64,000 nucleotides of DNA, taken from the sequence record MK250017.1; one strand, 5' to 3'. The notes under the pieces were generated by a model. That model saw only the letters and a program-made list of their open reading frames with translations, searched no databases and was not told where the DNA came from. Positions 3,098-63,688 of the stretch are shown one piece after another (the stretch's first letter is position 1; every line of letters starts with the position of its first letter). A program made the position numbers and the translations under genes.

Positions 3098-3199
3098 AAT
3101 TTTATTATGTATTTAATTTTTGTTGCTCAATAACTTCATATGTTAAACATACGGAGTTATTGTATAAATTTATTATTTAATTATTTTATATTCTATCTA

Positions 3200-3228
3200 T
3201 TTATAGAGAAAAAATTATAAATTGTCTA
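3200..3228 (-). promoter_or_regulatory. Sigma70-like promoter TAGACA-N17-TATAAA upstream of dnaK
   Basis: TAGACA at 3228-3223, exact 17-nt spacer, TATAAA at 3205-3200. The same architecture recurs at several sites. Confidence 0.6.
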
Positions 3229-3271
3229 TTTTTCTAATAATTTTTTTTTAATTTTATTTAATTATCTTTAT

Positions 3272-4141
3272 TCATTTCAATAATTTAGGTTTATTCCTTG
3301 CATTTCTTAAATTCATATCCATATAGCCTCCCATTGCCCAACGTCCTCTTGGTTCCATTTCTTCTAAAACTTCCATACGTCTTACACATATCGATTTCCA
3401 AAAATCTGTTGCTTCTTGTACTCTACTTCTCTTTCTATCTTTAAATGACGTTCCTTCATAATCGGTCCAATATCTTTGTGGAGCATCAGTATTTTCGATA
3501 CCTTCTTTTCTATTATTCACTTTTAATGCATTATTAGGAATAAATGAAAAAGCTTTATTACCGATACGTGACATAAAATTAGAAGCAGAACCTGGTTTCA
3601 ATTTACTTTCATCACCTTTTTTATGATAACCAGGATATGTAGCATCATTTGTTCCTATAAGATAACCATATGTTTTATCTTTTGGTTTATAATAAATTGA
3701 ATCTTGATTAAAATATTCAGCTAAAGATAAAAGATTATTTAAGAAATTAGGATCATTAAATCTATTTACAACAAAAAAACTTTCCTCTGATGACTCATTA
3801 TTCATTCCTTCTGGATATATTCCTTTTACGGTAGTTACACCATACTTTAAGTTTAATAATTCTGCTTTTAATAATTTATTTTTTTCTCGATTTTCTTCAT
3901 GAGTAAATATTTTTTTGTCCACCCAATTATCATTTGGACCATAATAAGTTTTATCTGGATTTGCAATGTCAATTAACTTATATCTAAATGCAGTAATAAA
4001 TGCACAATCACATTTATTTAACCATAACATCATACGGTTAAGTGATTTTTCATTTAACTCATTATTATATATTGCTATATTATTGAAATTATCAACTTCT
4101 TCTAATAATTTCTTTTTTATTGCATCATCAAAGTTATTCAT
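3272..4141 (-). CDS. Hypothetical phage protein, possibly DUF3293-like, 289 aa
   Basis: Open frame with TGA stop. Pattern AFITAFR...EENREKNKLLKAEL...YGVT.VKG.Y.E...EESFFV...AEYFNQDSI recalls DUF3293-like phage proteins (from memory, unverified). Confidence 0.7.
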   Translation of the reverse strand: MNNFDDAIKKKLLEEVDNFNNIAIYNNELNEKSLNRMMLWLNKCDCAFITAFRYKLIDIANPDKTYYGPNDNWVDKKIFTHEENREKNKLLKAELLNLKYGVTTVKGIYPEGMNNESSEESFFVVNRFNDPNFLNNLLSLAEYFNQDSIYYKPKDKTYGYLIGTNDATYPGYHKKGDESKLKPGSASNFMSRIGNKAFSFIPNNALKVNNRKEGIENTDAPQRYWTDYEGTSFKDRKRSRVQEATDFWKSICVRRMEVLEEMEPRGRWAMGGYMDMNLRNARNKPKLLK

Positions 4142-4154
4142 AATAAAATATTTT

Positions 4155-4649
4155 TTAATTATTTATATCCTCTCTAATAGAATGAAGTGTATTCAATATT
4201 TTTTGCTGCTTTCTTGTAAGTGCTTTCTTATTTCGTTTGAAAAAAATAATATAAAGAATATAACATCCTGGATCTCCATTTGGAAAATGAGTATCATTTC
4301 TATTTCCATTATACATAGAATATGTTGTTAAAATATCATAATCAACAAAATCATTTGGATTAAGATATGCACCAGGTACTTTATACCAATAATTAAACAT
4401 TTTTCTAATAACAGATTTTTTCACACGTCCAATACGTAATTGCATATACAAGTCTGTATGAAAATGCATGAGATGCGCTTGTACATCTCTCTTATCATAT
4501 TCATCTGGAATTCTATGTTCACGTTTTTGAATAGATTTTAATCTATTCTTTTTATACCAATTAATGTAAGGTATACATTTACTTTCCCAAAACTTATATT
4601 TATCAGACCATGCATTTCTTGCATGAACAACGCCACTTCTATATTTCAT
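4155..4649 (-). CDS. Hypothetical protein, 164 aa
   Basis: ATG..TAA ORF, tightly packed in the minus-strand run, no TAG. Confidence 0.75.
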   Translation of the reverse strand: MKYRSGVVHARNAWSDKYKFWESKCIPYINWYKKNRLKSIQKREHRIPDEYDKRDVQAHLMHFHTDLYMQLRIGRVKKSVIRKMFNYWYKVPGAYLNPNDFVDYDILTTYSMYNGNRNDTHFPNGDPGCYILYIIFFKRNKKALTRKQQKILNTLHSIREDINN

Positions 4650-4651
4650 AA

Positions 4652-5200
4652 TTAAATATACTTTTTATCTGTTTCACAAAAAATAGGTTTACAATCTTTA
4701 ATGCCAACCCATTGAACAAATTCGCCGAAAAGATTATATGCCTTTACTCTTGAACATGGTTTATTCAATAAAAGTATATAATATATCTTTCCTTTATGTT
4801 TAATCATTTTTAATTCTGAACTATTATCTTCTGATGAAATAGTAAGAGACATTTCATCTTGAAGATTTCTCATAATATTTTTACTATCATGAATAATAGC
4901 TTTATGATTTGGTAACATACTTATTAATGCTGTATATTCATCAATCGATTTATCTTCATTGATTTTAGTTGCAACATATTCTTTACCATTATGTTTCCAC
5001 TTTTCTGTTTTATTTGCAAATTGAGTATTTACAATCATACATGCATTTTTATAAGATATGTATTTATACCCATTTATATCTTTCTCCATAACACGACGAT
5101 CTTCACCATCATTCCATGGAGAAAGTTTAAGATAATGAGATGGCATAACCTTATATACAACCTCATTACAATCCTGTATATATTGTTTTTGATCGTCCAT
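4652..5200 (-). CDS. Hypothetical protein, 182 aa
   Basis: ATG..TAA ORF, 2 nt from the next gene, no TAG. Confidence 0.75.
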   Translation of the reverse strand: MDDQKQYIQDCNEVVYKVMPSHYLKLSPWNDGEDRRVMEKDINGYKYISYKNACMIVNTQFANKTEKWKHNGKEYVATKINEDKSIDEYTALISMLPNHKAIIHDSKNIMRNLQDEMSLTISSEDNSSELKMIKHKGKIYYILLLNKPCSRVKAYNLFGEFVQWVGIKDCKPIFCETDKKYI

Positions 5201-5253
5201 ATATTAATAATTTTATTTTCTACAACTATTTATATATAGAAAAATCAAAAAGT

Positions 5254-5673
5254 TTACTTCAACATATCTAAATAAAACTGTTTTTCTTCATCACTTGGAC
5301 ATTCCAAAATATGAAGTTCAAAAACAGGAGTTATTTTAATCAATTTCTGACTATATGTTTGCCAATGACTATATGATATATTGTTAAACTGTTTAAATGA
5401 ACCTATGAAATCTTTTATACAAATATTTTCATTAATTAAATCTGCAATAACATGAAATTCATCTTGTCCATTTAACAAATGAATATTACCAATATTATCT
5501 TTATATGCATTAATTTGAAATGTATCTCTGCACATAATTCGCAAAAACATTTTATTAATAAGTTTTTGCTTATCTATATTTTCATTAATGGACTCTTCAA
5601 ACTGTAAGACTTCTGAAGCTTTTAAGTTTTTAAGCTCATTATATGAAACTGTTTTTATATCAATATAAACCAT
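5254..5673 (-). CDS. Hypothetical protein, 139 aa
   Basis: ATG..TAA ORF in the gene run, no TAG. Confidence 0.7.
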   Translation of the reverse strand: MVYIDIKTVSYNELKNLKASEVLQFEESINENIDKQKLINKMFLRIMCRDTFQINAYKDNIGNIHLLNGQDEFHVIADLINENICIKDFIGSFKQFNNISYSHWQTYSQKLIKITPVFELHILECPSDEEKQFYLDMLK

Positions 5674-5678
5674 AATTC

Positions 5679-5894
5679 TTAAAATATTTTAAAATCTTTA
5701 TTTTCATATAAATTTGAAATAGGTTTAAACAATCTCAATACAATTAAACCTACTGCAACAACAAGAATTCCCCATAGTGAACCACTTGCAACCATAACAA
5801 AACCTTGATAAATTGCATAAAATGGTAAACAAATGATACCTAATACTGTCAAAAATAAAACAAATGTAAAGATATACTTAAATAATGTTGTCAT
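5679..5894 (-). CDS. Small membrane protein, 71 aa
   Basis: Two hydrophobic segments (YIFTFVLFLTVLGIICLPFYAIY; LWGILVVAVGLIVL). A TAnnTTTG promoter lies about 40 nt upstream. Confidence 0.75.
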   Translation of the reverse strand: MTTLFKYIFTFVLFLTVLGIICLPFYAIYQGFVMVASGSLWGILVVAVGLIVLRLFKPISNLYENKDFKIF

Positions 5895-5933
5895 AATTTT
5901 ATATTTTTTAATTGTTTATACTTTATTTATATT

Positions 5934-5944
5934 ACAAAGATACA
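5934..5944 (-). promoter_or_regulatory. Bacteroidota-type -7 promoter element (TGTATCTTTGT), copy 1 of 4
   Basis: Contains TAnnTTTG. The identical 11-mer recurs at 9749, 12341 and 59639, always upstream of a minus-strand start. Confidence 0.75.
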
Positions 5945-5963
5945 TATTTTATTTCAAATAAAA

Positions 5964-5997
5964 AAATCAGTTACCTAAAAAAATAGATAACTGATTT
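5964..5997 (-). terminator. Terminator hairpin after 6003..7388
   Basis: Stem AAATCAGTTA/TAACTGATTT with a T-run on the minus strand. Confidence 0.65.
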
Positions 5998-6002
5998 AAT
6001 AT

Positions 6003-7388
6003 TTAATAATACTTATCTCTCGAAATTTCATATGTATTTTCACTTTCATTAAAATCACATACAGAGTTATTATCTACATCAAATATAACCTGACGTGTTA
6101 ATTCAGTAACAACATATGGAGCATCAGAAGGCCAACGATATTTAAGATGTTTTGATGTCTTTGTATATGTACATATAAGTTTCCTATTATTTAAATTAAT
6201 ATTAATTTTATCAACATCTTTCTGATCACAAAAATAATGTGATTGATTATGTTTACCAATAATATATAATTTTTGATTTTTATTATATTCTGAACATTCT
6301 CTAATAATAGTTCTATATGCATAAGTTGCATCTGCCATCTTAGTTTTTGTTAAATCTATAATCTTATTATAATAGTTTTTATTGATATATTCAAGAATAT
6401 CATAATCAAGATAACCTGTCCATGGAGTTATCGCTATATTATCAATCATCTTATCGATTTCATCATTTGTAAAAATTTCAGAAATTAATAAATCAACATA
6501 TTCGCCATCGGATTCATAAGTTTTACTGAGTTTCACAATTTCTTCATTAAGATCTGCTTTCTTAACAGATTTAATATATGATTTATAACATGAATATGCA
6601 ACATCTTTTAAATCATTATTAATATCAATATGAATTATAGGCACATTTATCTGCTTTAAAACAGTTTTTAATTCTTCTTTATATATTTTATAAAACTCTT
6701 CTTTATATGAAGATGTAAGTTCTCTCATATAATCATATATTGATTTATCTCCAATAATATCAGATAATAATAATTTTAATGTACCATCTTTATCAATCCG
6801 TTTACTCTCACTTTTAGGATATATCTCTAATTTTCCATAAGTTGTAATAAAATGTTCTTTTTTATATTTCTTTAAAATAAAACCATTAAATGAAAAATAA
6901 TAAGCATTTTCTTTACAATCACAATAAGGCATCCAATAACGTTGTTCTAATGTTATATGTATAGTAAACAACTTTTTTCTTGATTTATCACATTGCTCTT
7001 TAAACTTAAACATTGCTCTAGAATATGCAAGTCTTTCATATCCTAAAAGTGATTTATAATTATAAGTACCATTATAAGAATCATCTAACCCTTCAAATTC
7101 ATTGTATAAATTAAATGTATCTGCATGTAGTGGTAAACCTGTTATCTTAATATTAAAGAAATTATATTCATTTTCTTTATATGAAGTATTTGTAAGTTTT
7201 GAGTATGTCAAAAGTTTACTTAAGAAAAACGATTTATAAAAATTTTGACATTCATTTATAAGAGCTTGTGCTTTATAATATTCTTCAACAAAATGACTTA
7301 AGTCTGAATAATTATTATAATCTGTCTTATGAAGTTCTACTAATGACTTTTCTTTATCATTAATATCAAATTTATCTATATTATTCAT
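6003..7388 (-). CDS. Hypothetical protein, 461 aa
   Basis: Long ATG..TAA ORF without TAG; no motif recognised. Confidence 0.8.
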   Translation of the reverse strand: MNNIDKFDINDKEKSLVELHKTDYNNYSDLSHFVEEYYKAQALINECQNFYKSFFLSKLLTYSKLTNTSYKENEYNFFNIKITGLPLHADTFNLYNEFEGLDDSYNGTYNYKSLLGYERLAYSRAMFKFKEQCDKSRKKLFTIHITLEQRYWMPYCDCKENAYYFSFNGFILKKYKKEHFITTYGKLEIYPKSESKRIDKDGTLKLLLSDIIGDKSIYDYMRELTSSYKEEFYKIYKEELKTVLKQINVPIIHIDINNDLKDVAYSCYKSYIKSVKKADLNEEIVKLSKTYESDGEYVDLLISEIFTNDEIDKMIDNIAITPWTGYLDYDILEYINKNYYNKIIDLTKTKMADATYAYRTIIRECSEYNKNQKLYIIGKHNQSHYFCDQKDVDKININLNNRKLICTYTKTSKHLKYRWPSDAPYVVTELTRQVIFDVDNNSVCDFNESENTYEISRDKYY

Positions 7389-7400
7389 TAAATTATTATT

Positions 7401-7868
7401 TTATAGTTCATACATCATATACTTATTATTGTAATAATATTCTTCATGATAATACATTCCATTACTAAATTCCCAAATTTGTTCTTTTGCTAAATTATTA
7501 TCTGACACAATATCATTCCAAACTTCAACACACATATCGCATGTACTTTCTAACTTACAACTTGGATTACATTTTAAAAATTCTTCTGGTGAAGACTGTA
7601 CAAAATTAGTTAAAACAAAATCACCTTTACCAATATTTAATTCACTAAAATATCCAATTCCATTATATCTTATTGTGAATCCCCATTCACCAGATACTTT
7701 ATAATAAAAAGCTTCATGATTATTTGGATTTACATATTTAAGAATATAAATATCATCAAAATTTCTATCCATACATATTTTCTTTAAATATATAGGAAAC
7801 CAAGGTAATATAATGTCAAAATGACTACTATATTTGGTTTTAATATCTGCTGTTTTTATTAATCCCAT
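7401..7868 (-). CDS. Hypothetical protein, 155 aa
   Basis: ATG..TAA ORF in the gene run. Confidence 0.75.
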   Translation of the reverse strand: MGLIKTADIKTKYSSHFDIILPWFPIYLKKICMDRNFDDIYILKYVNPNNHEAFYYKVSGEWGFTIRYNGIGYFSELNIGKGDFVLTNFVQSSPEEFLKCNPSCKLESTCDMCVEVWNDIVSDNNLAKEQIWEFSNGMYYHEEYYYNNKYMMYEL

Positions 7869-7870
7869 AA

Positions 7871-8368
7871 TTAAATATCATAATTCATAAATTTATTTGT
7901 CTTTTTAGTATTATTTGTTTTAGTATCTATTATTGCTTTGCCGAATTTATTACAATATGAAAATTCTAATGGTTCAAATATATTATATGTGTTATCAAAA
8001 GGTTTCCAAATAGAATTAAATTTATTACTATATCTAGAATTAAATTTATTACTATATGTAGAAAAAGATCTAACAGCAATAATATCACTTAATAATGTAT
8101 TATCTCTCAAATAATTAAATATTTCTTCTTTTATTTTTTTATATGTATTAGTATCTTCATCGCAAATAGTATATGTTAATATATTACGAATGAACCCAGT
8201 ATTTCCTACAAATTCATGTACAATATATTCTGCAAATTGCTCTGCATATTCATCTTCATTTGTATAACGAAATATAAATATTTTTATTGTATCATCATCA
8301 TTATTCCAATAATAAAAAACTTTATATATAGTTGATATATTATTAATCAAATTCTCATTAAATATCAT
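7871..8368 (-). CDS. Hypothetical protein, 165 aa
   Basis: ATG..TAA ORF with an internal 8-aa duplication. Confidence 0.7.
   Translation of the reverse strand: MIFNENLINNISTIYKVFYYWNNDDDTIKIFIFRYTNEDEYAEQFAEYIVHEFVGNTGFIRNILTYTICDEDTNTYKKIKEEIFNYLRDNTLLSDIIAVRSFSTYSNKFNSRYSNKFNSIWKPFDNTYNIFEPLEFSYCNKFGKAIIDTKTNNTKKTNKFMNYDI
8011..8058. repeat. In-frame 24-bp tandem duplication
   Basis: TAGAATTAAATTTATTACTATAT(C/G) occurs twice and encodes YSNKFNSR/YSNKFNSI. Confidence 0.9.
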
Positions 8369-8371
8369 ATA

Positions 8372-8770
8372 TTAAATTTCATATTTTGTATATGTTTTAT
8401 CTACATTTGAATAAACAGATTTCGCAGATAAATTCATGACTTCTAAAATATTATTATATTCTGCTTCAGTTATAAAAAATTTATTTCCAGATTTCAAAAT
8501 AACCGTATAATTTAATTCTTCATCTTCTCCATATTTCCTCATATCATTATTCATTTCAAGCGGTACTGCTAATGAAGATGATATAATATTTTGACAACTA
8601 TCTTTAAAACGTTTATCAAGACAAAGTCTTTTTACTGCATCACCTATATTTTCACCACATGCTTCTACCGTTTCGTATTCCAATAATTCATAAGGCCAAA
8701 CAGGACCAAACATTTCAATCTGTGAGATATTAAGTACAATACCATTATCTAATTTAATAAAACTATTCAT
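8372..8770 (-). CDS. Hypothetical protein, 132 aa
   Basis: ATG..TAA ORF in the gene run. Confidence 0.75.
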   Translation of the reverse strand: MNSFIKLDNGIVLNISQIEMFGPVWPYELLEYETVEACGENIGDAVKRLCLDKRFKDSCQNIISSSLAVPLEMNNDMRKYGEDEELNYTVILKSGNKFFITEAEYNNILEVMNLSAKSVYSNVDKTYTKYEI

Positions 8771-8785
8771 CTGCTTATCATAAAA

Positions 8786-9100
8786 TTAATCACGTTGTCC
8801 ATGATATATTTCAGTACTAGGTGGTTTTGGTAAATATATAAGTTTATTGGTATATCTCTGAAATGCTTCACAAAATGCTTTCATAATCACCATATTTTTA
8901 TAATAATCATGATATTCTTCTGAATTAATATCCGGCCTAGGAAATTCAGTATTCATTTTACCACTAATAAACTCATAACATTTATCAGTCAATCTATCAT
9001 AATCATATTTAGGAAGATCATATCCTCCAAACAATCTATCTCTCGTTACGTTATCTTTATTTTCTTCAATAAAAGATTTCAAAAAATCATCATATGTCAT
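8786..9100 (-). CDS. Hypothetical protein, 104 aa
   Basis: ATG..TAA ORF in the gene run. Confidence 0.7.
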   Translation of the reverse strand: MTYDDFLKSFIEENKDNVTRDRLFGGYDLPKYDYDRLTDKCYEFISGKMNTEFPRPDINSEEYHDYYKNMVIMKAFCEAFQRYTNKLIYLPKPPSTEIYHGQRD

Positions 9101-9115
9101 AATAACTAAAAATAA

Positions 9116-9151
9116 AAAGGTTACCTACCTTAATGTAGGTAAGTAACCTTT
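9116..9151 (-). terminator. Terminator hairpin after 9175..9648
   Basis: AAAGGTTAC...GTAACCTTT stem with inner CTAC/GTAG pairing and a T-run on the minus strand. Confidence 0.65.
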
Positions 9152-9174
9152 AGTAATATTAATAAATTAACTTA

Positions 9175-9648
9175 TTAATTTCCTTCTGTCATATCAACAG
9201 GCTCATCAACAGTATCATCCAAATCAATGTCAAGATCATCAATCTCAGACATCTCAAGAGCGAAACGGTCATCGTCATTAAAGTTCTTCAAGAACTTATC
9301 CATTACAAGCTTATACTTCGCAAGATCCTTCTTATCATGAATCTCCTCAACTCGAAGCTTAAAATCATTATCCCATGTATCAATGGTAAATCCCAAAAAC
9401 TTACGAGCTGAACAATTCTTCAAATCATCTGGACGAACACCATACTGCTCAATTCTTGCTGTAATATTTGCATCACCATCATGTACAGATGCACCTGCAC
9501 GAACAACATCGTCAATATTCATATTCTGTACCAAACCAAAAGGCTCACATGCTCGATTAGTCTTATACTCATACTTCTTACCTTCAAGCTGCTTTACCTT
9601 CTTTGCTGCAATCTTATACTTAGCAACAATCTCTTTACGTGTAATCAT
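9175..9648 (-). CDS. Hypothetical protein, 157 aa, probably highly expressed
   Basis: ATG..TAATAA. Codon choice (AAG, GAG, CGT) resembles dnaK. Two promoter types upstream and its own terminator. Confidence 0.85.
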   Translation of the reverse strand: MITRKEIVAKYKIAAKKVKQLEGKKYEYKTNRACEPFGLVQNMNIDDVVRAGASVHDGDANITARIEQYGVRPDDLKNCSARKFLGFTIDTWDNDFKLRVEEIHDKKDLAKYKLVMDKFLKNFNDDDRFALEMSEIDDLDIDLDDTVDEPVDMTEGN

Positions 9649-9795: not shown

Positions 9796-11034
9796 TTATT
9801 GTTTATTAATCCATTCTTTTACTTCATTAATATTCCAAAATTCTATATAATTCAAATTATTCTACTATGATATATTCCTTTTTTTCAAATCTAATATAGT
9901 CCATGTATAAATAATATTATCATATTGTGACTTCTTACCATTTTTATGTGCATTAGAATTTTCTGCTTTTTCTTTTAAGTTATTCAGCTCATTTAAATCA
10001 TATTCATTATTTTCATTAAATGGATGATAATGATGATAATGAGATCCGTTATATTCAATATATAAATCTAATGATGGTATATAAAAATCACAATTAAATG
10101 GATACAATTCTGATTTATATTGTCTAATACAATCTGAATATTTTTCTTTTAATAAATCAAAACATACATCTTCTTGATATGATATATTAAATGAATTATT
10201 TAATAATTTTGTATTATAAATTTTTTTCTATATTTCATTACTACTTAATATAGATGAAATTAAATTTTTATAGTATTGTGTCTANNNNNNNNNNNNNNNN
10301 NNNNNCTTTTCTAAACATGTATTTTTTATTTTATCTTTTACATATTTAAGTTGACCAATATTTACGATACTATTAATATCATCTTCATTAGAAGCATATT
10401 TTTTAATACATGTATCTAATGACTAATTTCGAAATTTTTGAACTTTAAATACAGAATCAACCCCATACTTTTCTAAACATGCTTTATAAGTTTTTTCTAT
10501 TTTTTCAGGAATCTAACCTGTATACTCAACACCATATTTTTGTAAACATGTTTCTTTTGATTTTTGTTTAAATATTTCAGATTTTAAAGGGGATGTTACT
10601 CCATATCTTTGTAAACATGTTTCTCTTGCTTTAATTCTATTAGAATAATGTTCATCTCCATATTTTAATAAACATGTTTCTCTTATTTTATTATTAATCT
10701 CTTGCTTTTTATCTACATCACTATATATGTCTTTTAATACTTTTTTAACTGTTATACCATCTAACATATTTGCATGTTCTTTACAACATGTTTTATTAAA
10801 TAATTGATTCTTTTTACCATTCAAAAATTTAACAGGTTTTCCACAAATAACACATACAGGGCGAACCTCTATATTATACTGTATTCTCTTAATTGTTTCT
10901 CTTAATGACTATGAATCAGTATAGCGATTATCTAAATATTCCTTATACCCCTCAGAAATATTAGTTAATCGCTATACATTTATATGTCCATTAGATTTAA
11001 TAAAATAATCTAATATAATCTAATCTGTTACCAT
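9796..11034 (-). CDS. Homing-endonuclease-like PD-(D/E)XK (Vsr/DUF559-type) protein, TAG=Gln, spans an N-gap
   Basis: One frame from ATG 11034 to TAA 9796 through at least 9 TAG and a 21-N gap. N-terminal CVICG...TCC, repeated ETCLxKYGV units, C-terminal CDFYIPSLDLYIEYNG..H and NLNYIEFWN. Confidence 0.8.
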
Positions 11035-11036
11035 AC

Positions 11037-11882
11037 TTAATAATTTTCATTTTTAGGTTGATCAACCTTATCATAAGTACCATATTTTACAAAATACTTA
11101 TTGAAATCGCAAGTTTTAACTTTGAAGATAATTCGTTCACCCTTACGTGTCTTCAAGCCCATAGGTGTACGAAGAACTAGTCCTTCGGCAAGATGCGTTT
11201 CTTCTGCAATATTAGAATTAAATCCTTTCTTTACATATTCAATTGCTTCATCAATAGTAAACTTACCTACAAATGGAACAATATTTACACCAAGTTTATT
11301 GAAAATTTCATCTCGATTTTCACGGAGAAGATACATATCATCTACCTTCACATCAAATCCAATAAATGAATTATCTTTTCTATAGTATCCACCTGATTGA
11401 ATTCCTGCACCAAATCCTTCACCATACAATGTATATCTCTTTGGAATTTTTGTTTCATCAAGTTCATATACATTGAATTGTGTATTAAGTACAGACCATG
11501 TTTTTTCTTGCATTAGTTCATCTGTTACATACATTTCCTTAGAAAGACCCAATGCATTCAATACCTTATCTTCTGTCAATTCAGTTGTAAGATATGCATA
11601 CAACATCTTTGGGATCTGTGCATTATCAGTCTTTCCATTATATGTAACATTCCACTTAATACCAATATTATTACCAATGTCTGATGTGATAAATTCACGG
11701 GTTACTTCAATTCGAGTATTAGTTCCGTCTACCTTCTCCTCTGCATCAAACTTGCAATCCCGCAACCATTCCAACTCAGGTACTGCAAATTCATCATAAG
11801 GCATGATTACATTATTTGCATCTCTCTTAAAGATTGTGTTAATCTTCTGATAAGTATTCTCACTTCTTTTCTGCTTACCCAT
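11037..11882 (-). CDS. RNA ligase, Rnl2-type nucleotidyltransferase, 281 aa
   Basis: Motif I EKVDGTN, LYGEGFG, FIGFDV, EGLVLR, IFKVK. TAA stop, no TAG. Confidence 0.88.
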   Translation of the reverse strand: MGKQKRSENTYQKINTIFKRDANNVIMPYDEFAVPELEWLRDCKFDAEEKVDGTNTRIEVTREFITSDIGNNIGIKWNVTYNGKTDNAQIPKMLYAYLTTELTEDKVLNALGLSKEMYVTDELMQEKTWSVLNTQFNVYELDETKIPKRYTLYGEGFGAGIQSGGYYRKDNSFIGFDVKVDDMYLLRENRDEIFNKLGVNIVPFVGKFTIDEAIEYVKKGFNSNIAEETHLAEGLVLRTPMGLKTRKGERIIFKVKTCDFNKYFVKYGTYDKVDQPKNENY

Positions 11883-16728: not shown

Positions 16729-17166
16729 AATTACTGGTAATTTGAGAATGATAGAATATATAGATTTTTGATTAGTGAAATTTTGATTAGTTAATATTAT
16801 TTAGAATTTGTATAAATTAACATAAAAATAATATTGATTATCAATCAGTTATAAATTATTTTTTAACATTTATTAAAAATATTTAGAAAAATGTAGACTT
16901 TTTCTTAAAACNNNNNNNNNNNNNNNNNNNNNNNNNNNNNNNTTGAGATAGATATTATACATAATATGTAAAAAAATTAAATATATTTTTTAATAATTTA
17001 ATAAGGTAAGCCTTTCGGAAATGTAAATATATTTTGAATATGGTATAGAAATATTTTTTATTTTTATATCATATTTTTATTTTATAGTATATAAAACATT
17101 ATTAATAATTATTAGTAAAATATATGATAAAGTTTTATATTTACTTATTATAATTACTTTAATTTG

Positions 17167-55508: not shown

Positions 55509-55527
55509 TTCTGTTTGCAAACCATTG

Positions 55528-55599
55528 TGCTCTATACAGGGATCGAACCCGTGATCTGGAAGTTTAAAATTTCCTGCTGTACCGCTTAGCTAATAGAGC
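55528..55599 (-). tRNA. tRNA with UUA anticodon (ochre/amber suppressor type)
   Basis: GCTCTAT/ATAGAGC acceptor, A73, D-arm GCT..AGC with GG, anticodon arm GGAAA-TTTTAAA-CTTCC (anticodon TTA, A31xC39 mismatch), T-arm ACGGG-TTCGATC-CCTGT. CCA not encoded. Confidence 0.88.
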
Positions 55600-55871: not shown

Positions 55872-56079
55872 TTAATTTTTATTTATGATTTTATTATTCT
55901 CCCATGTTTTGCTCCAATTTGCATCTGTTTTTAAATGTTGAAAACGAACATATTTGCCTACATTCTTATCAAAATCATTATAATTAAAACTATCTGCATT
56001 TCGTACTACAAAACCTTCAACTTCTTGTGATTTATGTAAATCACAATAATCAGAGAATGCTTTAATAATATTCTTAATA
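55872..56079 (-). pseudogene. Split RNA ligase, piece 3 (C-terminal)
   Basis: (N)IKNIIKAF...EVEGFVVRNADSF...KNVGKYVRFQHLKTDANW: motifs IV and V, then TAA. Confidence 0.88.
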
Positions 56080-57566
56080 TTAAATAATTCACTTATAACA
56101 TATATAACTTTAATATTATATATGACATATATATGATTTGTCTGAAGTGAATCTAGAAAACTACAGATTAAACTAATCTATAGAAAGTCTATATTTAATT
56201 TTAGACTTTTTGAAGAAGTAATATAGTTCAATCAAATCCTTGTATGTAGGTTGTAAATTAAATTCTTCCAACGACTCAAGATACAACTTATTAAACATAC
56301 TCAAATTCGGTCTTATTATATTCTTTTTAATTTCTTTTGTTTTACTTATATATTGATTATAAAACTCATAACCACGCCTACCTATTTCTATTGATGCTAA
56401 TATCATATCAGGTAAATTTAATGAACGATATAGAAAATTACCAATAAAACTTGAATATTCTGGTTTAACTTTTAATAACTTAATATTATGAATATTACAA
56501 CGTTTAGTTAAATTATTCACAAATGTTGTTCTACACCATGAATTATTAACCAATTTATTAAAATATACACCTAAATCTTTATCTGAAGTTTTGATATTTA
56601 AATTCTCTATAGAAATAAGTTGACATTTATAATATATAGATTTATTAATTATATTCTTTACAATTTGTAAAGTCTCATAATTTCTCTTATCTGAAATATA
56701 TTTTCTTTCATTTGAATCAGATGAATATCCTTTATTCTTTAAATTAAAATCTTTATCATTCAATTTTTTAATTGAATAAATACCTGATTTGATAACATCA
56801 AATTCATTTTCAGATTTCCAATCAACAATAGACCATCCTATATAATTAGGATTTAAATCCAAAGATAGTACTCTATTTTTTATAAATTTAGTTTCATAAT
56901 TATAAACATCATTTTCTTCAAATATCACATAAATATATTCTAAATCTAATTTATATGCAATCTTTATTTCTTTTCTTTCTTGTTTCTAATATAGTTTAGA
57001 TAATATCTACTTTCTTTTATTTAATCCAATTAACCATAAATTTATTTTTGTATGTTTATTTGGTTTAAATATAATATTTTCTAAATCTTGTTCTATGTGA
57101 AATTTTCTATTTCCTTTAACTGATTTATTAACTATTTCACCTATTGAATATAAAGCCGATAATCTTTTCTACTTAAACTATTCTTTTGAAATATTGTTCT
57201 TTAATCTCTAAAAATAATTCTTCTTACTGCCAAATATAATTTTCTATTTCTTTGGTATATCATAGAAAGAACATTGAATAAACCAACTATCTAACAAATA
57301 TATATTGTTTAATGTTTTTATTTGTTGTTTTATATCTTTCTAAGATTTACCTTCCTATACTCTATTGTATACAAAATGCTGTACAGAACTATACTATTTC
57401 ATATAATTCCGTATAATATCTAATGATTGTTCATCCGTTCGATATTTAATCTTTAATACTTGCATTTTTAATTGTATATAATATTATATTCTTTTATTAT
57501 TTATCTGAATAATTTTAAAAAATAATAAATTCTTATAAAATATAAATTATAAGGTATTATTATATT
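56080..57566 (-). mobile_element. TnpB-only element B (about 1,487 bp) inserted in the RNA ligase gene
   Basis: Lies exactly between ligase codons ...GTG TAT AA | T ATT AAG. Left flank TATAA, right end TTTAA, subterminal hairpin CTTATAA-N8-TTATAAG. No tnpA. Confidence 0.82.
56116..57465 (-). CDS. tnpB: TnpB-like RuvC nuclease lacking the Zn finger, 449 aa, 11 TAG=Gln
   Basis: RuvC-I VLSLDLNP, RuvC-II ISIENL, VKPEYSSFIGN...LPDMILASIEIGRRG (RuvC-III). The track shows only the TAG-free middle. Confidence 0.78.
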
Positions 57567-57768
57567 TTATACACGCCTCTGTATATTTCGTCTACTATTT
57601 TGATATTATTTTTTTCACAAAATGAAACTGTTTTATCCCATGATAAACAATTATTTTTATCATCGTATATAGAAAAACATTGAAACAATTCATTCACATT
57701 TTTAAATGTATATGATATAGAATGTTTTGCCTGCATGTTTTCACCACATACTCGATAACCGTCAGGAA
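57567..57768 (-). pseudogene. Split RNA ligase, piece 2 (middle)
   Basis: (I)PDGYRVCGENMQAKHSISY...FQCFSIYD...CLSWDKT...IYRGVY: motifs III and IIIa. Not in the track. Confidence 0.88.
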
Positions 57769-59137
57769 TTAAATAACAGTATGTTAAAACTTGAACAAAT
57801 TTGAACTTTGCTCTTTATTAACTTCTTGCTTCACTCTATCACTACTTTTTAGGTTCATTTCTGAACGGTCATCCATAGTTGGATAGTCCACAAGCTTAAA
57901 TTCGGGTGTACTGCACCCTATTATTCTTAAACCTTCATCAAGTATATTTAGTGCTGCATTGTAATCTCTATTAATAAGTTTACCACAATTAGGACAGGTC
58001 CATTCTCTATCACTCAATTTTAATTTCTTAAAAATATAACCACAACAGTTACATGTTTTACTTGATGGATAAAATCTATCTACAAATACTATCTTTCTGT
58101 TATACCATCTTGCTTTATACTCTAATATTCTTCGGAATTCACCAAAATTCATTTCTAAAATACTTTCAGCAAGTTTATGGTTCTTAACCATACCTTTCAC
58201 ATTTAAGTCTTCCATACATATAACTTGGTTTTCGTCAATGAGTGAATTACTTACATAGTGAAGATAGTATTGTTTTCTATCATTTATTGTTTTATATACT
58301 TTAGCAAGTTTAATTCTTGCTTTATTTCTGTTGTTACTTCCTTTTTGTTTTCTTGAAAGTTGTTTTTGAAGTTTATTTAACTTAATTATCTCATTCTTTT
58401 TAAAATGTAAGTTATTGAATACTTCTCCTTCTGATGTGATGATAAAATCTTTTACACCAAGGTCAATACCTACACAATTATCACTATCTTGTAATCCTTT
58501 ATGTATTAAATCACCATCAACCAATATTGACAAATAATATTCACCGCAAGGTAGTTTAGATAATGTTGCTTGTCTAATATTATCATGATGTTTTTGTAAA
58601 TATTGTACATATTTTTTATTACATCTGAACTTAATATTCTTTATATTAGCAAGAGATAACTAATATGTTGTATAATCATTCTTTCTTGAGATGGTACCGA
58701 TTTCAAATCTACAGCTTTGTTTGTTATCATGTTTTGATTTGAATTTTGGATACCCTGTATGTTGTTTAAAGAAACGTTTATATGCATCTAACATATCCAT
58801 TATAGATTGTTTAAGAACTTTTGTATTCTGTTCTCTGAGCCATATAAAATTATCATCTTTCAATAGTTCATGATGAAACCAATAACTGAGTGTAGATCTG
58901 TTTTCAGAAATATTATGTTCTTTATATTGATTTATTTTTCGAGCAAGTGTTTGATTATATACAAAACGACAACAACCAAGCAACTTATTAATTTGTGTTG
59001 CTTGTTCCATATTTGGGTATAATCTTATTTTTATTGCTCTTAACATAATTTATTTTTTTGTTTATTTCTTTTTTCTCTTATTTATTTAAATAATTTTTAT
59101 AAAAATGTACAATATTGTTCAAATTATTTATTTACTA
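57769..59137 (-). mobile_element. TnpB-only element A (about 1,369 bp) inserted in the RNA ligase gene
   Basis: Lies between ligase codons TTA A | TT CCT. An 11-bp direct repeat TGTTATTTAAT (59137-59147 and 57768-57778) makes the exact border slide. No tnpA. Confidence 0.85.
57784..59046 (-). CDS. tnpB: IS605-type TnpB nuclease, 420 aa, one TAG=Gln
   Basis: N-terminal KIRLYPN.EQ...GCCRFVYN, GIDLGVK (D), CMEDLNV (E), SSKTCNCCG/CPNCG Zn finger, NRDYNAALNI (D). Track ORFs 58660..59046 and 57784..58533 join across one TAG. Confidence 0.92.
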
Positions 59138-59671: not shown

Positions 59672-60646
59672 TTATTGATGTAAAATAATTTGCAATTTAA
59701 ATACAAGTCCTAATAATGTCACAAACTTATCAATAGATGTTGCAAGCATAGAATTATATTCTGCTGTTGCAATAAGAATAAGTGGAAGTTTATTTCCAAA
59801 TTGTGGACATGTTGTTAAAATAAAATCAGGAAAATCTTTACCGATTGCAAGAACTGCATCATCTGCACGTGTAGACCAATCAGCAACAAGTTTCTTATAA
59901 TTATTTACAGGATCTGGTTTATCTATAATAAGTTTAAAAAGATCTGAACAATCATATGTATTTGATAACATATCAGCTGATAATTCTTTTGCCCCTCTTG
60001 TATAAAGATTCTGAATCTTATTTAAAAGTGAACGCATATCAGGAAATGAACTTCTAACAAATGATGTTACTGTTTCATCTGTATATTGAATATTAAATTT
60101 TGTTAATATATATTTAATACGCTCAAGATAACCATTAAACAAATAAGTTTCTTCTTCTTTAGTAACAGGATCTATTGCTACAAGATTAAATCTAGATTGA
60201 ATAGGTTCTGGTACTTTATCAATATAATTACAGTTTGCAATAAATCTTACAGTTTTATGATATTTCTCAATAGTAGCACGAAGAGCTTTCCATGCTTCAA
60301 GTGAAAGTCCGTCACACTCTTCAAGAACAATAACCTTTAATTTTTCTTCACCAGAAAACAATGAAGATTGTGAAGCAAATGCGATAACTTTATCTCTAAT
60401 TGTATCAATACCATTTTCAAGTGATGCATTAATTTCCAAAACTGTATAACCCTTTGATAATATGCGAGTTAATGTTGACTTACCAGCACCAGGAGATCCA
60501 GCAAATAAAATATTATTTGTTAATCCATGTTGAAGGACTTCTCTAATTCGTGGTACAATAATTGCTTGATCCAATGTTTGTGGTCGTAACATTTCAGTAA
60601 ACAACTTCTGTGTTACATGAGTCTGTGTTGTATTATTATTTTCCAT
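59672..60646 (-). CDS. Sliding-clamp loader AAA+ subunit (T4 gp44 / RFC-small-like), 324 aa
   Basis: RPQTLD, GSPGAGKST, INAS.E.GIDTIR, VLEECD, FIANCN, IQSRF. No TAG. Confidence 0.92.
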   Translation of the reverse strand: MENNNTTQTHVTQKLFTEMLRPQTLDQAIIVPRIREVLQHGLTNNILFAGSPGAGKSTLTRILSKGYTVLEINASLENGIDTIRDKVIAFASQSSLFSGEEKLKVIVLEECDGLSLEAWKALRATIEKYHKTVRFIANCNYIDKVPEPIQSRFNLVAIDPVTKEEETYLFNGYLERIKYILTKFNIQYTDETVTSFVRSSFPDMRSLLNKIQNLYTRGAKELSADMLSNTYDCSDLFKLIIDKPDPVNNYKKLVADWSTRADDAVLAIGKDFPDFILTTCPQFGNKLPLILIATAEYNSMLATSIDKFVTLLGLVFKLQIILHQ

Positions 60647-61715: not shown

Positions 61716-62921
61716 TTAGTTAAAATTTTTTTTAACTGGATTCATCACTAACCCTCTATTTGTTGGAGATATAATCTCTTCACAAACTACATTTAAATAT
61801 TTTCTAAGTATATTTAAACTTCCATTTATATCTGCATTAATTAATATATTATTAGTTACATATAATCCTCTCTTTATACGTTTTCCTGAAAAATTATAAT
61901 GTTTATAATCTGAATTACATACTGGTATATAATCATTATCAAAAAATGATGCTTTACTTGTATATGATTCTTCTTGTAAAATAACATTAATTCCTTGTAA
62001 TTTACATTTATATTTTAACATATTAATTAGTATTTCAAAAGGAATAGATACAAAATTTTGATTATTTTTATTACCTAATTTAGTCTCTTGTTTCCAACCA
62101 TTATTTTTACCTATAATTAATGTATTAATGGATTGTTCAACTAATTGATTAACTATATATTTAGATACTTTATGAAAATAATCTTTAATTTTATTATTTC
62201 TCTTTAATGATAATCTATATAATCTATTTGACTAGTTCTTATGATTTTTTAATTTTAATTCTGATTGAAATTTTGATTTTTGCTTATTATAAAATTGATT
62301 TATAGATTTAATAGGTTTTCCATTTATAATAAATGATTTAGTTACATTAGAAATACAAGTGCATAAATTATCTATACCCAAATCTATAGACATATACCTA
62401 TGATTATCAGATTTTATATTTTTTTCTTTTATTTCATAAATTACTTCAAGTAAAATATAATTATTACGAGGTACAATACGTACTTGATTAATATTATTAT
62501 GTTGTATTTTAAATTGTATATTAGATTTTGGTAATTTGAGTATATATTGTTTTAATAAATTAGGAGATAATGTCATATGATTATAAATAACAACCTATCT
62601 ACCTTTTGTTTTATCAAGATAATTTGGGATTTTCGCATTTACTTTTTTATATGAATTAAAAAATGATTTATAATTCCAATAACATAATCTTATTATTTGC
62701 TAAGATGTATTAGCTGGTAATGACCTATAATCTATTTGATTTTCATTTTGAAATTCTTTACATAACTTATAATAATTTTTAAATGATTTATCTTTAAAGA
62801 ACTATATACGTATTCTATATAATGCTTGATTATATAAATTTTTTGATAAAAAACATAAATTATCAAGTTCATTATATCTTTTATCATTCTTTTTTATTAT
62901 ATGACGTTCTACTAATTTCAT
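61716..62921 (-). CDS. tnpB: TnpB nuclease (IS200/605-related, no Zn finger, EESYTSK type), 401 aa, TAG=Gln
   Basis: MKLVERHII...SKNLYNQALY...NTSQQII, MSIDLGIDNL (D), IIGKNNGWKQ, QEESYTSKASFFD, INADINGSLNI (D). Four TAG. No tnpA nearby. Confidence 0.88.
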
Positions 62922-63193: not shown

Positions 63194-63688
63194 TTAGAGT
63201 AACAAAATTGCCAATAATATTGCACCACTTCCGACTAATGTAGTTACAATACTATTAACAATATAAATTTTCTTTTTTGATTTCAATACAGGTTGATAAT
63301 TCCATATAGCCAAATATCTACAACTAAAAGGTTTCCCACTTGATGGATCTTCAACATGGTAAAATTCTGGTATTGTAACATTATCACCAAGTTTTAAATC
63401 TTCACGAAGATATTTAGAGACAAAATATGACATTTCATTTAATTTATCCATAATTTGCCATTGCTGCCCTTTTAACTGATATTCTTCGGGTATATCAATT
63501 ACTTGTACAACCTCATAAAAATTATTTGTTGCTCGTAAATTACTCTGATTAAAAAAACTATTTCTATCATTTGTTTCACTTTGAATTATTTTATGAAATG
63601 CTTTTTTAATCAATTTATCAGTAGAAGATTGATGGTAATCATCTAAAAATGAATTCCACCAATCTTTTATATTTTCAAATAGTTTCAT
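63194..63688 (-). CDS. Hypothetical protein with C-terminal transmembrane anchor, 164 aa
   Basis: Ends IYIVNSIVTTLVGSGAILLAILLL-TAA. Confidence 0.75.
   Translation of the reverse strand: MKLFENIKDWWNSFLDDYHQSSTDKLIKKAFHKIIQSETNDRNSFFNQSNLRATNNFYEVVQVIDIPEEYQLKGQQWQIMDKLNEMSYFVSKYLREDLKLGDNVTIPEFYHVEDPSSGKPFSCRYLAIWNYQPVLKSKKKIYIVNSIVTTLVGSGAILLAILLL

What the first reader, a model, noticed from the sequence alone, without database searches (positions are those of the whole stretch)
56116..57465. A TnpB-like nuclease locked to the phage genetic code (11 in-frame TAG)
Seen: the 449-aa ORF has 11 TAG, nine of them before the RuvC-I motif, yet keeps D/E/D catalytic residues and lacks the usual Zn finger. 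In standard code it would stop at codon 24. Inference: the element is a long-term resident of recoded phages, would be inert in the host chromosome, and can be expressed only once amber readthrough is on (late infection, when many genome copies are available for homing). The genetic code would then act as a host-range and timing barrier for a mobile element.
Basis: partly seen in the sequence, partly recalled or inferred. Interest (0 to 1): 0.7.

Follow-up and report, generated by a model that had tools for sequence, protein, structure and literature searches.

The report
Recoded TnpB transposon in Lak megaphage
The gene is the RNA-guided nuclease of a small jumping element (a relative of ISCaje4/IS607) living in the gut megaphage Lak-A1; like the phage's late genes it spells about half of its glutamines with the stop codon TAG, so it can only be made once the phage has switched the genetic code, but this looks like adaptation to the phage rather than a special lock.

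Summary
Window 56116-57465 (minus strand) is a 449-codon ORF with 11 in-frame TAG, a TAA stop, conserved D203/E287/D353 and no Zn finger. The window is Prevotella megaphage Lak-A1, which reads TAG as Gln.

AlphaFold plus Foldseek place the protein in the TnpB/Cas12f fold. Pfam and NCBIfam TnpB models miss it. It is the nuclease of a discrete 1,487-bp element (window 56080-57566), and natural empty-site alleles exist. A sister copy in the same genome carries an IS607-type serine transposase. The last ~94 nt of the ORF plus 36 nt downstream hold a covarying three-helix RNA scaffold typical of an omega RNA.

TAG alternates with CAA/CAG at the same columns among copies, and dN/dS is about 0.1, so this is recoding and not decay.

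The family is not confined to code-15 phages. Most members, including the named ISCaje4 of Campylobacter phage CP220, are TAG-free in standard-code large phages. The Lak copies form one TAG-rich clade nested among them. Their TAG share (0.48) equals that of other recoded Lak genes, and the N-terminal TAG clustering is not conserved. No true chromosomal copy was found in 401 genomes of the host's family.

Verdict: a new, code-adapted member of a known kind. Code-gated late expression is plausible but untested.

The parts
56080..57566 (-). Whole mobile element, 1,487 bp: a tnpA-less derivative of an IS607/ISCaje4-like element
   Evidence: Contigs in four public runs join 56079 directly to 57567, skipping 1,487 bp with a 3-nt TAA ambiguity. 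This is a natural empty site. Similarity between copies begins and ends at these borders.
57466..57566 (-). Left end and 5' untranslated region
   Evidence: The terminal ~30 nt (AATATAATAATACCTTATAATTTA) is homologous to the terminus upstream of tnpA in the complete copies L008 and L009. The ATG-proximal ~60 nt matches the tnpA-tnpB spacer.
56116..57465 (-). tnpB-like ORF, 449 aa under TAG=Gln, with 11 TAG codons (57394-96, 57355-57, 57340-42, 57244-46, 57208-10, 57178-80, 57169-71, 57007-09, 56986-88, 56173-75, 56161-63)
   Evidence: Translation. AlphaFold2 pLDDT 95.2. The top 35 Foldseek PDB hits are Cas12f, TnpB, Cas12k and Fanzor2. dN/dS is about 0.1.
56857..56859 (-). RuvC-I Asp203 (motif LDLNPNYIG)
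   Evidence: Invariant in 80 homologues.
56605..56607 (-). RuvC-II Glu287 (motif ISIENL)
   Evidence: Invariant. A profile aligns this region to the Cas12f RuvC-II segment, E 0.003.
56407..56409 (-). Putative RuvC-III Asp353 (motif LPDMILASIEIGRRG)
   Evidence: Kept in at least 90% of homologues. It lies at the N-terminus of helix 353-373. The assignment is by motif position only and was not superposed.
56184..56209 (-). RNA hairpin 1 of the omega-RNA-like scaffold, inside the ORF
   Evidence: 8 pairs, 6 with compensatory double changes, 99% of cells paired across 33 sequences.
56161..56183 (-). RNA hairpin 2. TAG431 lies in its loop and TAG435 in its 3' arm.
   Evidence: 6 pairs, 5 with compensatory changes. 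TAG435 is fixed in 17 of 17 Lak-type copies.
56145..56161 (-). Conserved GTTTTCTAG motif and the 5' arm (GATTCACTT) of long-range helix P3
   Evidence: Motif conserved across the family. A fixed-register 9-bp helix occurs in 25 of 44 sequences against 10% of shuffles, with 11 covarying arm variants, p about 3e-14.
56080..56094 (-). 3' arm of P3 (AAGTGAATT) and the right-end tail ATTTAA
   Evidence: The right-end border comes from the empty site.
56060..56079 (-). 3' flank TATTAAGAATATTATTAAAG, the predicted guide of this copy's omega RNA (inferred)
   Evidence: Sequences beyond the right end differ in every copy. That they act as guides follows from what is known of TnpB systems and was not tested here.
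57567..57571 (-). TATAA directly 5' of the left end: candidate TAM or insertion motif (tentative)
   Evidence: Present at 5 of 5 insertions of this subfamily. Only two borders (WIN, L010) are set independently by empty sites.

Best explanation
The ORF encodes the RNA-guided nuclease (a TnpB homologue without the Zn-finger/TNB module) of a 1.49-kb non-autonomous insertion sequence of the IS607 type. Its closest named relative is ISCaje4 of Campylobacter phage CP220.

The element keeps both ends and the nuclease gene but has lost the serine-recombinase gene tnpA. An intact tnpA plus tnpB copy elsewhere in the Lak-A1 genome could supply that enzyme in trans.

The last ~94 nt of the ORF and the 36 nt up to the right end fold into a conserved three-helix scaffold. 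By analogy with TnpB systems, this is cut out of the mRNA as an omega RNA whose guide is the flanking DNA. The nuclease-RNA complex would cut alleles that lack the element, and repair from a filled genome copy would restore or spread it (homing).

The element family is native to large phages that use the standard code. One lineage colonised TAG-recoded Lak phages and diversified there. Its Gln codons drifted to the phage's normal TAG share, in tnpB and even more in tnpA. As a result both proteins can be translated only when the phage's amber-suppressor machinery is active.

Shown: fold, conserved acidic residues, element borders, empty sites, sister tnpA, RNA covariation, TAG=Gln, purifying selection, phylogeny.
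Inferred: RNA processing, guide use, cleavage, homing, trans-mobilisation, late timing.
For: Identity of the genome: 100% match to Lak-A1 MK250016. TAG recoding is window-wide.

Fold: pLDDT 95.2. The best PDB matches are Cas12f, TnpB, Cas12k and Fanzor2, all at probability 1.0. The profile hits the Cas12f RuvC-II region. The best viral structure matches include ISCaje and IS607 'transposases'.

Mobility: there are 3, 5 and 2 copies in Lak-A1, Lak-C1 and Lak-B7. A natural empty site of the window copy was found. Copy L013 is a clean 1,589-bp insertion in Lak-C1 relative to Lak-A1.

Transposase: the ORF upstream of copy L008 scores 168.7 bits on the NCBIfam 'IS607 family transposase' model, cutoff 110, and hits Pfam Resolvase at 2.4e-24. 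The window's left-end tip is homologous to the tip upstream of that tnpA.

RNA: 96.8% of cells paired, 11 of 14 pairs compensatory, 0 of 500 shuffles as good, slid controls 13-48%. The third helix is supported at p about 3e-14. There is one scaffold per tnpB copy.

Code: TAG alternates with CAA/CAG at the same columns, for example column 267 with TAG 12, CAA 5, CAG 1, and also columns 282 and 371. dN/dS is 0.08-0.17. Opposite TAG, TAG-free homologues have Q at 16% against a 3.6% background.

Phylogeny: the 18 Lak-type copies form one TAG-rich clade nested in TAG-free phage lineages. A second TAG-rich clade arose independently.

Named relative: ISCaje4 TnpB, 44.7% identity over 96% of the protein, in a 1,714-bp IS with a resolvase-like ORF (Timms 2010, PMC2853527).
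Against: - No curated TnpB model recognises the protein, and profile comparison with the canonical TnpB next door is not significant.
- The RuvC-III assignment is not confirmed by superposition.
- No RNA ends, no evidence of transcription and no protein evidence: the RNA-library data are contigs only.
- The window copy has no tnpA, and trans-mobilisation is unproven.
- One filled-versus-empty comparison (L010) is not a clean insertion; about 24 bp are replaced.
- The TATAA motif rests on few independent borders.
Confidence: 0.8

Rival explanations
1. Adaptive code lock. TAG codons are selected in this element because they confine production of the nuclease and transposase to late infection and prevent activity in standard-code cells. 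The code itself would then serve as a timing and host-range device for the element.
For: - Both element genes need TAG read-through. tnpA spells 18 of 23 Gln codons as TAG across three copies, above the genome's 0.31-0.60.
- tnpB is a TAG-rich island among TAG-poor neighbours, whose shares are 0-0.10.
- No TAG-free member nests inside the 18-member Lak clade.
- No true copy was found in 401 host-family genomes.
- Borges et al. proposed the same logic for a homing endonuclease in TGA-recoded phages.
Against: - The tnpB TAG share (0.48) is ordinary for recoded Lak genes.
- N-terminal clustering is not conserved (47% against 40%).
- TAG and CAA/CAG swap freely at the same sites, as expected for neutral synonymous drift.
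- The one fixed TAG (codon 435) sits in an RNA stem and is explained by pairing.
- The tnpA counts are small and the copies are related.
- Absence from host genomes also holds for the TAG-free relatives, which are phage-borne too.
Confidence: 0.25
2. Domesticated phage nuclease. The gene no longer serves a transposon but works for the phage, for example against competing phages or plasmids or as an RNA-guided regulator.
For: - Most Lak-type loci (21 of 25) lack tnpA.
- The gene is under purifying selection.
- Phage-borne TnpB derivatives with host-directed roles are known, such as TldR (papers listed).
Against: - Catalytic residues are kept.
- Both element ends are retained.
- Copies sit at different places in near-identical genomes, and empty sites exist.
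- There is one copy-specific flank per scaffold and no CRISPR-like array or standalone guide RNAs.
Confidence: 0.1
3. Decaying pseudogene. The TAGs are nonsense mutations in a dead transposon gene.
For: Under table 11 the frame stops at codon 24.
Against: - There are no TAA or TGA in 449 codons, P about 1e-14.
- The whole phage reads TAG as sense (Devoto 2019, PMC6784885).
- TAG aligns with Gln.
- dN/dS is about 0.1.
- Thousands of intact 449-aa homologues are on record.
Confidence: 0.01

Closest known systems
ISCaje4 of Campylobacter phage CP220 (Timms et al. 2010, PMC2853527; GenBank NC_027997 128167-129880)
   Same: Same protein family (44.7% identity over 96% of the protein). Same layout: a resolvase-type tnpA, then a ~450-aa tnpB, with the element ending a few tens of bases after the stop. 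Also carried by a large virulent phage.
   Different: ISCaje4 has no in-frame TAG and sits in a standard-code phage. Its tnpA is truncated. It was filed under IS200/IS605 (subgroup IS608) and has never been tested functionally. The Lak copies are recoded and multi-copy, and most lack tnpA.
IS607-family elements with TnpB and omega RNA (for example ISFba1 and other RAGATH-18-guided IS607 TnpBs, PMC11061315; PDB 8iaz)
   Same: A serine-recombinase TnpA passes the IS607 equivalog model. The nuclease has the TnpB fold. A structured RNA overlaps the 3' end of tnpB up to the right end. There is no target duplication.
   Different: There is no Zn-finger/TNB domain. NCBIfam IS607_TnpB and guided_TnpB do not match the protein. 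Rfam finds no RAGATH-18 or other known RNA family here.
ISDra2 TnpB / Cas12f (PDB 8exa, 8h1j, 8j3r, 7c7l)
   Same: Overall fold across nearly the whole length, a D/E/D RuvC site and similar size.
   Different: Sequence identity is only 10-14%, TM-score about 0.45, the Zn finger is missing and there is an extra ~90-aa helical C-terminal part.
TnpB major clade RIIIr-4 of Altae-Tran et al. 2023 (PMC10691335)
   Same: Lacks the C4 zinc finger and is enriched in viruses.
   Different: RIIIr-4 is defined by His replacing the RuvC-III Asp. This family keeps Asp353 and has no conserved His there.
Recoded homing endonuclease of a group I intron in TGA-recoded Jade phages (Borges et al., bioRxiv 10.1101/2021.08.26.457843)
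   Same: A selfish-element nuclease whose in-frame recoded stops should delay its production until the code switch.
   Different: It involves a different nuclease type, a different stop codon and a different phage clade. In that case recoding was statistically enriched, whereas tnpB here is not enriched over other recoded genes.

Membership tests
TnpB/Cas12 superfamily | Bilobed TnpB/Cas12f-like fold with a C-terminal RuvC domain | tested here: met
   AlphaFold2 pLDDT 95.2, pTM 0.90. The top 35 Foldseek PDB hits are all Cas12f, TnpB, Cas12k or Fanzor2, at probability 1.0 over 370-480 columns.
TnpB/Cas12 superfamily | Conserved RuvC-I Asp, RuvC-II Glu and RuvC-III Asp | tested here: met
   D203 and E287 are invariant and D353 is kept in at least 90% of 80 homologues. 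D353 is placed by motif position only; superposition was not possible.
TnpB/Cas12 superfamily | C4 zinc finger (TNB domain) between RuvC-II and RuvC-III | tested here: not met
   No CxxC and no conserved Cys. Pfam Cas12f1-like_TNB matches 1 of 80 members, weakly. The neighbouring canonical TnpB has this domain.
TnpB/Cas12 superfamily | Score above the curated thresholds of Pfam OrfB_IS605 or NCBIfam guided_TnpB / IS607_TnpB | tested here: not met
   No hit for the protein. Relatives reach 19-21 bits on TIGR01766 against a cutoff of 32.
TnpB/Cas12 superfamily | Structured guide RNA encoded at and beyond the 3' end of the gene, ending at the element border | tested here: met
   Three helices are supported by covariation. 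The scaffold ends 6 nt before the right end.
TnpB/Cas12 superfamily | RNA-guided, TAM-dependent DNA cleavage | not testable with these tools
   Needs biochemistry or an interference assay.
IS607 family insertion sequence | Serine-recombinase TnpA (HTH plus resolvase domain) upstream of tnpB | tested here: inconclusive
   Absent from the window copy. Present in sister copies: L008 scores 168.7 bits on NF033518 against a cutoff of 110, and L115 shows MerR plus Resolvase. The window copy keeps the matching left-end tip.
IS607 family insertion sequence | Discrete insertion without target-site duplication | tested here: met
   Natural empty site with only a 3-nt ambiguity. L013 is a clean 1,589-bp insertion.
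ISCaje4 (same IS) | Near-identity to the named element, as ISfinder isoforms require | tested here: not met
   44.7% protein identity. Same family, but a different element.
TnpB clade RIIIr-4 | RuvC-III Asp replaced by His | tested here: not met
   Asp353 is conserved and there is no conserved His. Definition taken from PMC10691335.
Code-15 (TAG=Gln) gene of a recoded phage | In-frame TAG aligned with Gln and interchanging with CAA/CAG, under purifying selection | tested here: met
   TAG share is 0.48, like other recoded genes of the window.

The most novel reading that the evidence does not exclude
The genetic code acts as a one-way door for a transposon lineage. Once the ISCaje4-like element entered TAG-recoded Lak phages, both its transposase and its guide-RNA nuclease became untranslatable anywhere else. 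This would create a code-private clade that can spread only among recoded phages and is switched on only after the code change. The phage itself would benefit from a selfish nuclease that stays silent early in infection. In addition, the family is a large phage-restricted branch of Zn-finger-less, ~450-aa RNA-guided nucleases that current TnpB models do not see.
Probability: 0.3. Interest if true: 0.7.

Novelty: new member of a known kind. Interest (0 to 1): 0.5.

Why it matters
This is, as far as the searched literature shows, the first described case of a transposon whose transposase and RNA-guided nuclease are both written in a phage's alternative genetic code. The Lak papers do not mention transposons or TnpB.

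It offers a natural test of whether stop-codon recoding gates selfish elements as well as lysis genes. It also gives a clean marker for dating how long a gene has lived in a recoded genome: the TAG share is 0.48 here, against 0.05 (1 of 20 Gln codons) and 0.19 (4 of 21) in the two canonical TnpB genes nearby.

In addition it points to a large family of compact nucleases, at least 1000 clusters at 50% identity. The family is phage-borne and lacks the Zn finger. Its guide-RNA scaffold is well defined, yet standard annotation misses it, so it may interest the genome-editing field.

Tried and rejected
Searches that found nothing or could not be run:
- Single-sequence Pfam, PHROGs and PDB searches found nothing useful.
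- hhalign of the family profile against the canonical TnpB next door was not significant.
- A C-terminal sub-profile against PDB failed to map RuvC-III.
- The window's own assembly is not held, and the nearest held record (G001) has no copy.
A motif-homogeneous subset worked but is limited to members with D[LM]NPNYIG.
- The atlas fold search did not complete.

Leads that went nowhere:
- Lak-B7 has no syntenic empty site for the window copy.
- The upstream motif is unique in the window, so it gave no promoter-class inference.
- No standalone omega-RNA copies were found in three Lak genomes.
- RNA-library runs hold only contigs and small shares. They showed the empty site but give no proof of transcription, strand or RNA ends.
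- A generic longest-stem control was uninformative in AT-rich DNA and was replaced by a fixed-register test.

Ideas rejected:
- Pseudogene.
- N-terminal TAG clustering as a design feature.
- Restriction of the family to code-15 phages.
- Membership of clade RIIIr-4.

The 22 hits in 'cellular' genomes are all in metagenome bins. Several lie on 88-360-kb multi-copy contigs whose flanks carry phage-type genes, so I do not count them as chromosomal.

Full report
**Observation.** The ORF lies on the minus strand of window 56116-57465. It has an ATG start, 449 sense codons and a TAA stop. Its only internal stop codons are 11 TAG, at codons 24, 37, 42, 74, 86, 96, 99, 153, 160, 431 and 435. TAA or TGA occur at 6.9% of codons on this strand, so a 449-codon frame free of them has a chance probability of about 1e-14. 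The window matches Prevotella phage Lak-A1 (MK250016) at 100% identity. Lak-A1 is a 541-kb megaphage known to read TAG as Gln (Devoto 2019, PMC6784885). Within the window, long ORFs of up to 2,499 codons carry up to 31 TAG. Genes fall into two classes: TAG-free, or with TAG making up 0.31-0.60 of all Gln codons.

**What the protein is.** Pfam, PHROGs, NCBIfam and a single-sequence PDB search do not recognise it. An exhaustive HMMER search found at least 1000 clusters of relatives at 50% identity, and the word-index search found 2,472 proteins. In an alignment of 80 diverse members, D203 (LDLNPNYIG) and E287 (IENL) are invariant and D353 (LPDMILASIEIGRRG) is nearly so. AlphaFold2 on that alignment gave pLDDT 95.2. 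The top 35 Foldseek matches in the PDB are all Cas12f, TnpB, Cas12k or Fanzor2 chains, aligned over almost the full length. A family profile also aligns weakly to the RuvC-II segment of Cas12f. The Zn finger is absent. There is no CxxC and no conserved Cys. Only about 15 residues separate the YSSFIG strand from D353, against about 37 with two CxxC pairs in the canonical TnpB next door. I could not confirm by superposition that D353 is the RuvC-III Asp. That assignment rests on motif position and conservation.

**It is a mobile element with defined borders.** Lak-A1 holds 3 copies, Lak-C1 holds 5 and Lak-B7 holds 2. All have 8-14 in-frame TAG. In four public runs, contigs join window 56079 directly to 57567, skipping 1,487 bp with only a 3-nt TAA ambiguity. 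This is a natural empty site, so the element is window 56080-57566. A second case is copy L013 of Lak-C1, a clean 1,589-bp insertion relative to the near-identical Lak-A1. A third (L010) is an insertion with about 24 bp of the empty site missing. There is no target duplication.

Copy L008 of Lak-A1 has a 201-aa ORF with 7 TAG directly upstream of tnpB. It scores 168.7 bits on NCBIfam 'IS607 family transposase' (cutoff 110) and hits Pfam Resolvase at 2.4e-24. The window copy lacks this gene, but its left-end tip is homologous to the tip upstream of that tnpA. The window copy is therefore a tnpA-deletion derivative. Only 4 of 25 Lak-type loci keep tnpA.

**Guide-RNA scaffold.** The last ~94 nt of the ORF and the 36 nt up to the right end contain two hairpins (56184-56209 and 56161-56183) and a conserved GTTTTCTAG motif. 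On 33 sequences, 96.8% of cells pair and 11 of 14 pairs show double compensatory changes. No shuffle of 500 reaches this, and slid controls fall to 13-48%. Frequent U-G pairs make the structure specific to the sense strand.

A third, long-range helix joins the 9 nt starting at the final G of the motif (56145-56153) to 56086-56094, six bases before the right end. In fixed register it occurs in 25 of 44 sequences against 10% of shuffles, with 11 covarying arm variants (p about 3e-14). Beyond the right end every copy differs, as expected if the flank supplies the guide. A covariance model finds exactly one scaffold per tnpB copy and no standalone copies. Rfam has no match. TATAA lies directly 5' of the left end in 5 of 5 insertions of this subfamily. 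It is a tentative TAM or insertion motif, because only two borders are independently defined.

**Recoding, not decay.** Among 18 Lak-type copies, TAG alternates with CAA/CAG at the same columns. Examples are column 24 (CAA 13, TAG 4, CAG 1), column 267 (TAG 12, CAA 5, CAG 1), column 282 (TAG 7, CAA 7, CAG 4) and column 371 (CAA 11, TAG 7). dN/dS under TAG=Gln is 0.08-0.17 for unsaturated pairs. Opposite TAG, TAG-free homologues show Q at 16% and E at 21%, against backgrounds of 3.6% and 6.5%. This is much like the picture opposite genuine CAA/CAG Gln codons. TAG435 is fixed in 17 of 17 copies and lies in the 3' arm of hairpin 2. TAG-free relatives have GAG there, with a compensating change in the 5' arm.

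**Is the code a special lock?** The TAG share of Gln codons in tnpB is 0.48, the same as other recoded genes of the window. The clustering of nine TAG before RuvC-I is real in this copy. Across the clade, however, TAG makes up 47% of Gln codons in codons 1-160 and 40% in codons 161-430, so it is not a conserved design. Two points lean the other way. The gene is a TAG-rich island among TAG-poor neighbours. And tnpA spells 18 of 23 Gln codons as TAG across three related copies.

**Distribution.** A scan of IMG/VR gave 130 confirmed relatives, mostly on contigs of 100-550 kb and often several per genome. Copies on Lak-like contigs of 21-28% G+C have 6-15 TAG. The more distant ones have none, and their flanks read well in the standard code. 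In a maximum-likelihood tree of 84 proteins, the 18 Lak-type copies form one TAG-rich clade nested among TAG-free lineages. A second TAG-rich clade (L043/L044/L063) has a TAG-free sister.

GenBank phages with the family are Lak phages and cultured Campylobacter phages. In CP220 the gene is annotated 'ISCaje4 transposase TnpB' inside a 1,714-bp IS with a resolvase-like ORF (Timms 2010). Among 185,579 species genomes, a motif-limited scan found 22 loci. All are in metagenome bins and all are TAG-free across the matched stretch. Several are multi-copy on 88-360-kb contigs with phage-type neighbours. An HMM search of 401 genomes of the host's family found a true member only in one such bin. The other 11 hits are weak RuvC matches inside ~1,230-aa ORFs.

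**Comparison with what is known.** The element works like an IS607-type TnpB/omega-RNA transposon and is a relative of ISCaje4. It fails the Zn-finger feature and the curated model thresholds of TnpB. It also fails the Asp-to-His criterion of the Zn-finger-less, virus-enriched clade RIIIr-4 of Altae-Tran 2023. The idea that recoding delays a selfish nuclease until late infection was already proposed for an intron homing endonuclease in TGA-recoded Jade phages. The Lak papers searched do not mention transposons or TnpB.

**Verdict.** It belongs to a recently mobile, tnpA-less ISCaje4/IS607-like element with a well-supported omega-RNA scaffold. Dependence on the phage's code is certain at the level of translation. 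Whether that dependence is an evolved lock or simple adaptation to the resident genome is open, and the present data favour the latter. Expression timing, RNA processing, cleavage and homing are inferred and not shown.

Noticed in passing
window 57784-59046 (-): A canonical IS605-type TnpB (HTH_OrfB_IS605, OrfB_IS605 and a Zn-ribbon TNB domain; NCBIfam guided_TnpB 310 bits) lies directly upstream. It has a single TAG, at codon 129. The ISCaje4-like element begins only 217 nt after its stop, possibly at or near that element's own right end. Paralogues at 67-81% DNA identity occur at several places in Lak-C1 and Lak-B7.
   Followed up: partly
window 61716-62921 (-): A second canonical TnpB (OrfB_IS605 plus TNB) with 4 TAG. 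The window therefore holds three TnpB-type genes with very different TAG loads (1, 4 and 11), which may reflect time of residence or expression class.
   Followed up: no
window 55527-55599 (-): A suppressor-type tRNA with anticodon UUA (reads TAA, and TAG by wobble) lies about 480 nt beyond the element's right end on the same strand. Crisci et al. 2021 report such a tRNA in all 51 Lak genomes and find no evidence that TAA is recoded. TAA also ends the ORF studied here.
   Followed up: partly
L008:844-1449, L007, L009 (complete Lak copies): The IS607-type transposase gene spells 5-7 of its 7-8 Gln codons as TAG (18 of 23 in three related copies). That is a higher share than tnpB or other recoded genes.
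   Followed up: partly
L010 (Lak-C1 47.8-49.1 kb) against Lak-A1 72386-72410: The filled site lacks about 24 bp that the empty site has, and its left end is shorter than in the window copy. This suggests a deletion across the left junction, or co-conversion from a diverged donor. The left flank is 97% identical and the right flank 99%.
   Followed up: partly
Lak-A1 MK250016 at about 475145, 522333, 492518, 170694 and 85147: The 60-80 bp just upstream of the tnpB start codon of copy L010 has weak matches (80-84% identity) at several other genome places. These could be solo left ends or a shared promoter or leader. No such match occurs in the window.
   Followed up: partly
window 1127-9648, 11037-11882, 59672-60646, 63194-63688: Blocks of genes with no TAG at all stand beside genes with a TAG share of 0.31-0.60. 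The first 4 kb are also richer in G+C (0.32-0.34 against about 0.24). This fits the early/late split described for recoded phages.
   Followed up: no
11 of 401 Bacteroidaceae genomes (e.g. L148, L150, L152): The family profile weakly matches (25-33 bits) a ~100-residue stretch spanning the RuvC-I to RuvC-II region inside ORFs of about 1,230 aa. These are probably Cas12a-type effectors of the host family. This was not verified.
   Followed up: no
run X12, contig covering window 56080-56182: One 5.2-kb contig carries only the right-end ~100 nt of the element and then continues into unrelated sequence. It may be a truncated copy or a different variant of the element.
   Followed up: no
Campylobacter phage F379 MT932329 139437-140743: The family member there is split into two 'putative endonuclease' ORFs (238 and 243 aa), so that copy appears broken. 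CP220, vB_CjeM_WX1 and CJLB-13 have it in one matched piece.
   Followed up: no
L036, L037, L076, L078 (viral contigs): By a crude ORF-coverage measure, the flanks of some TAG-free relatives read better with TGA as sense. Yet the tnpB homologue there has no in-frame TGA (L078 was not scored). If real, recoded TGA phages hold unrecoded copies.
   Followed up: no
window 10285-10305 and 16912-16942: Two runs of N (21 and 31 bases).
   Followed up: no
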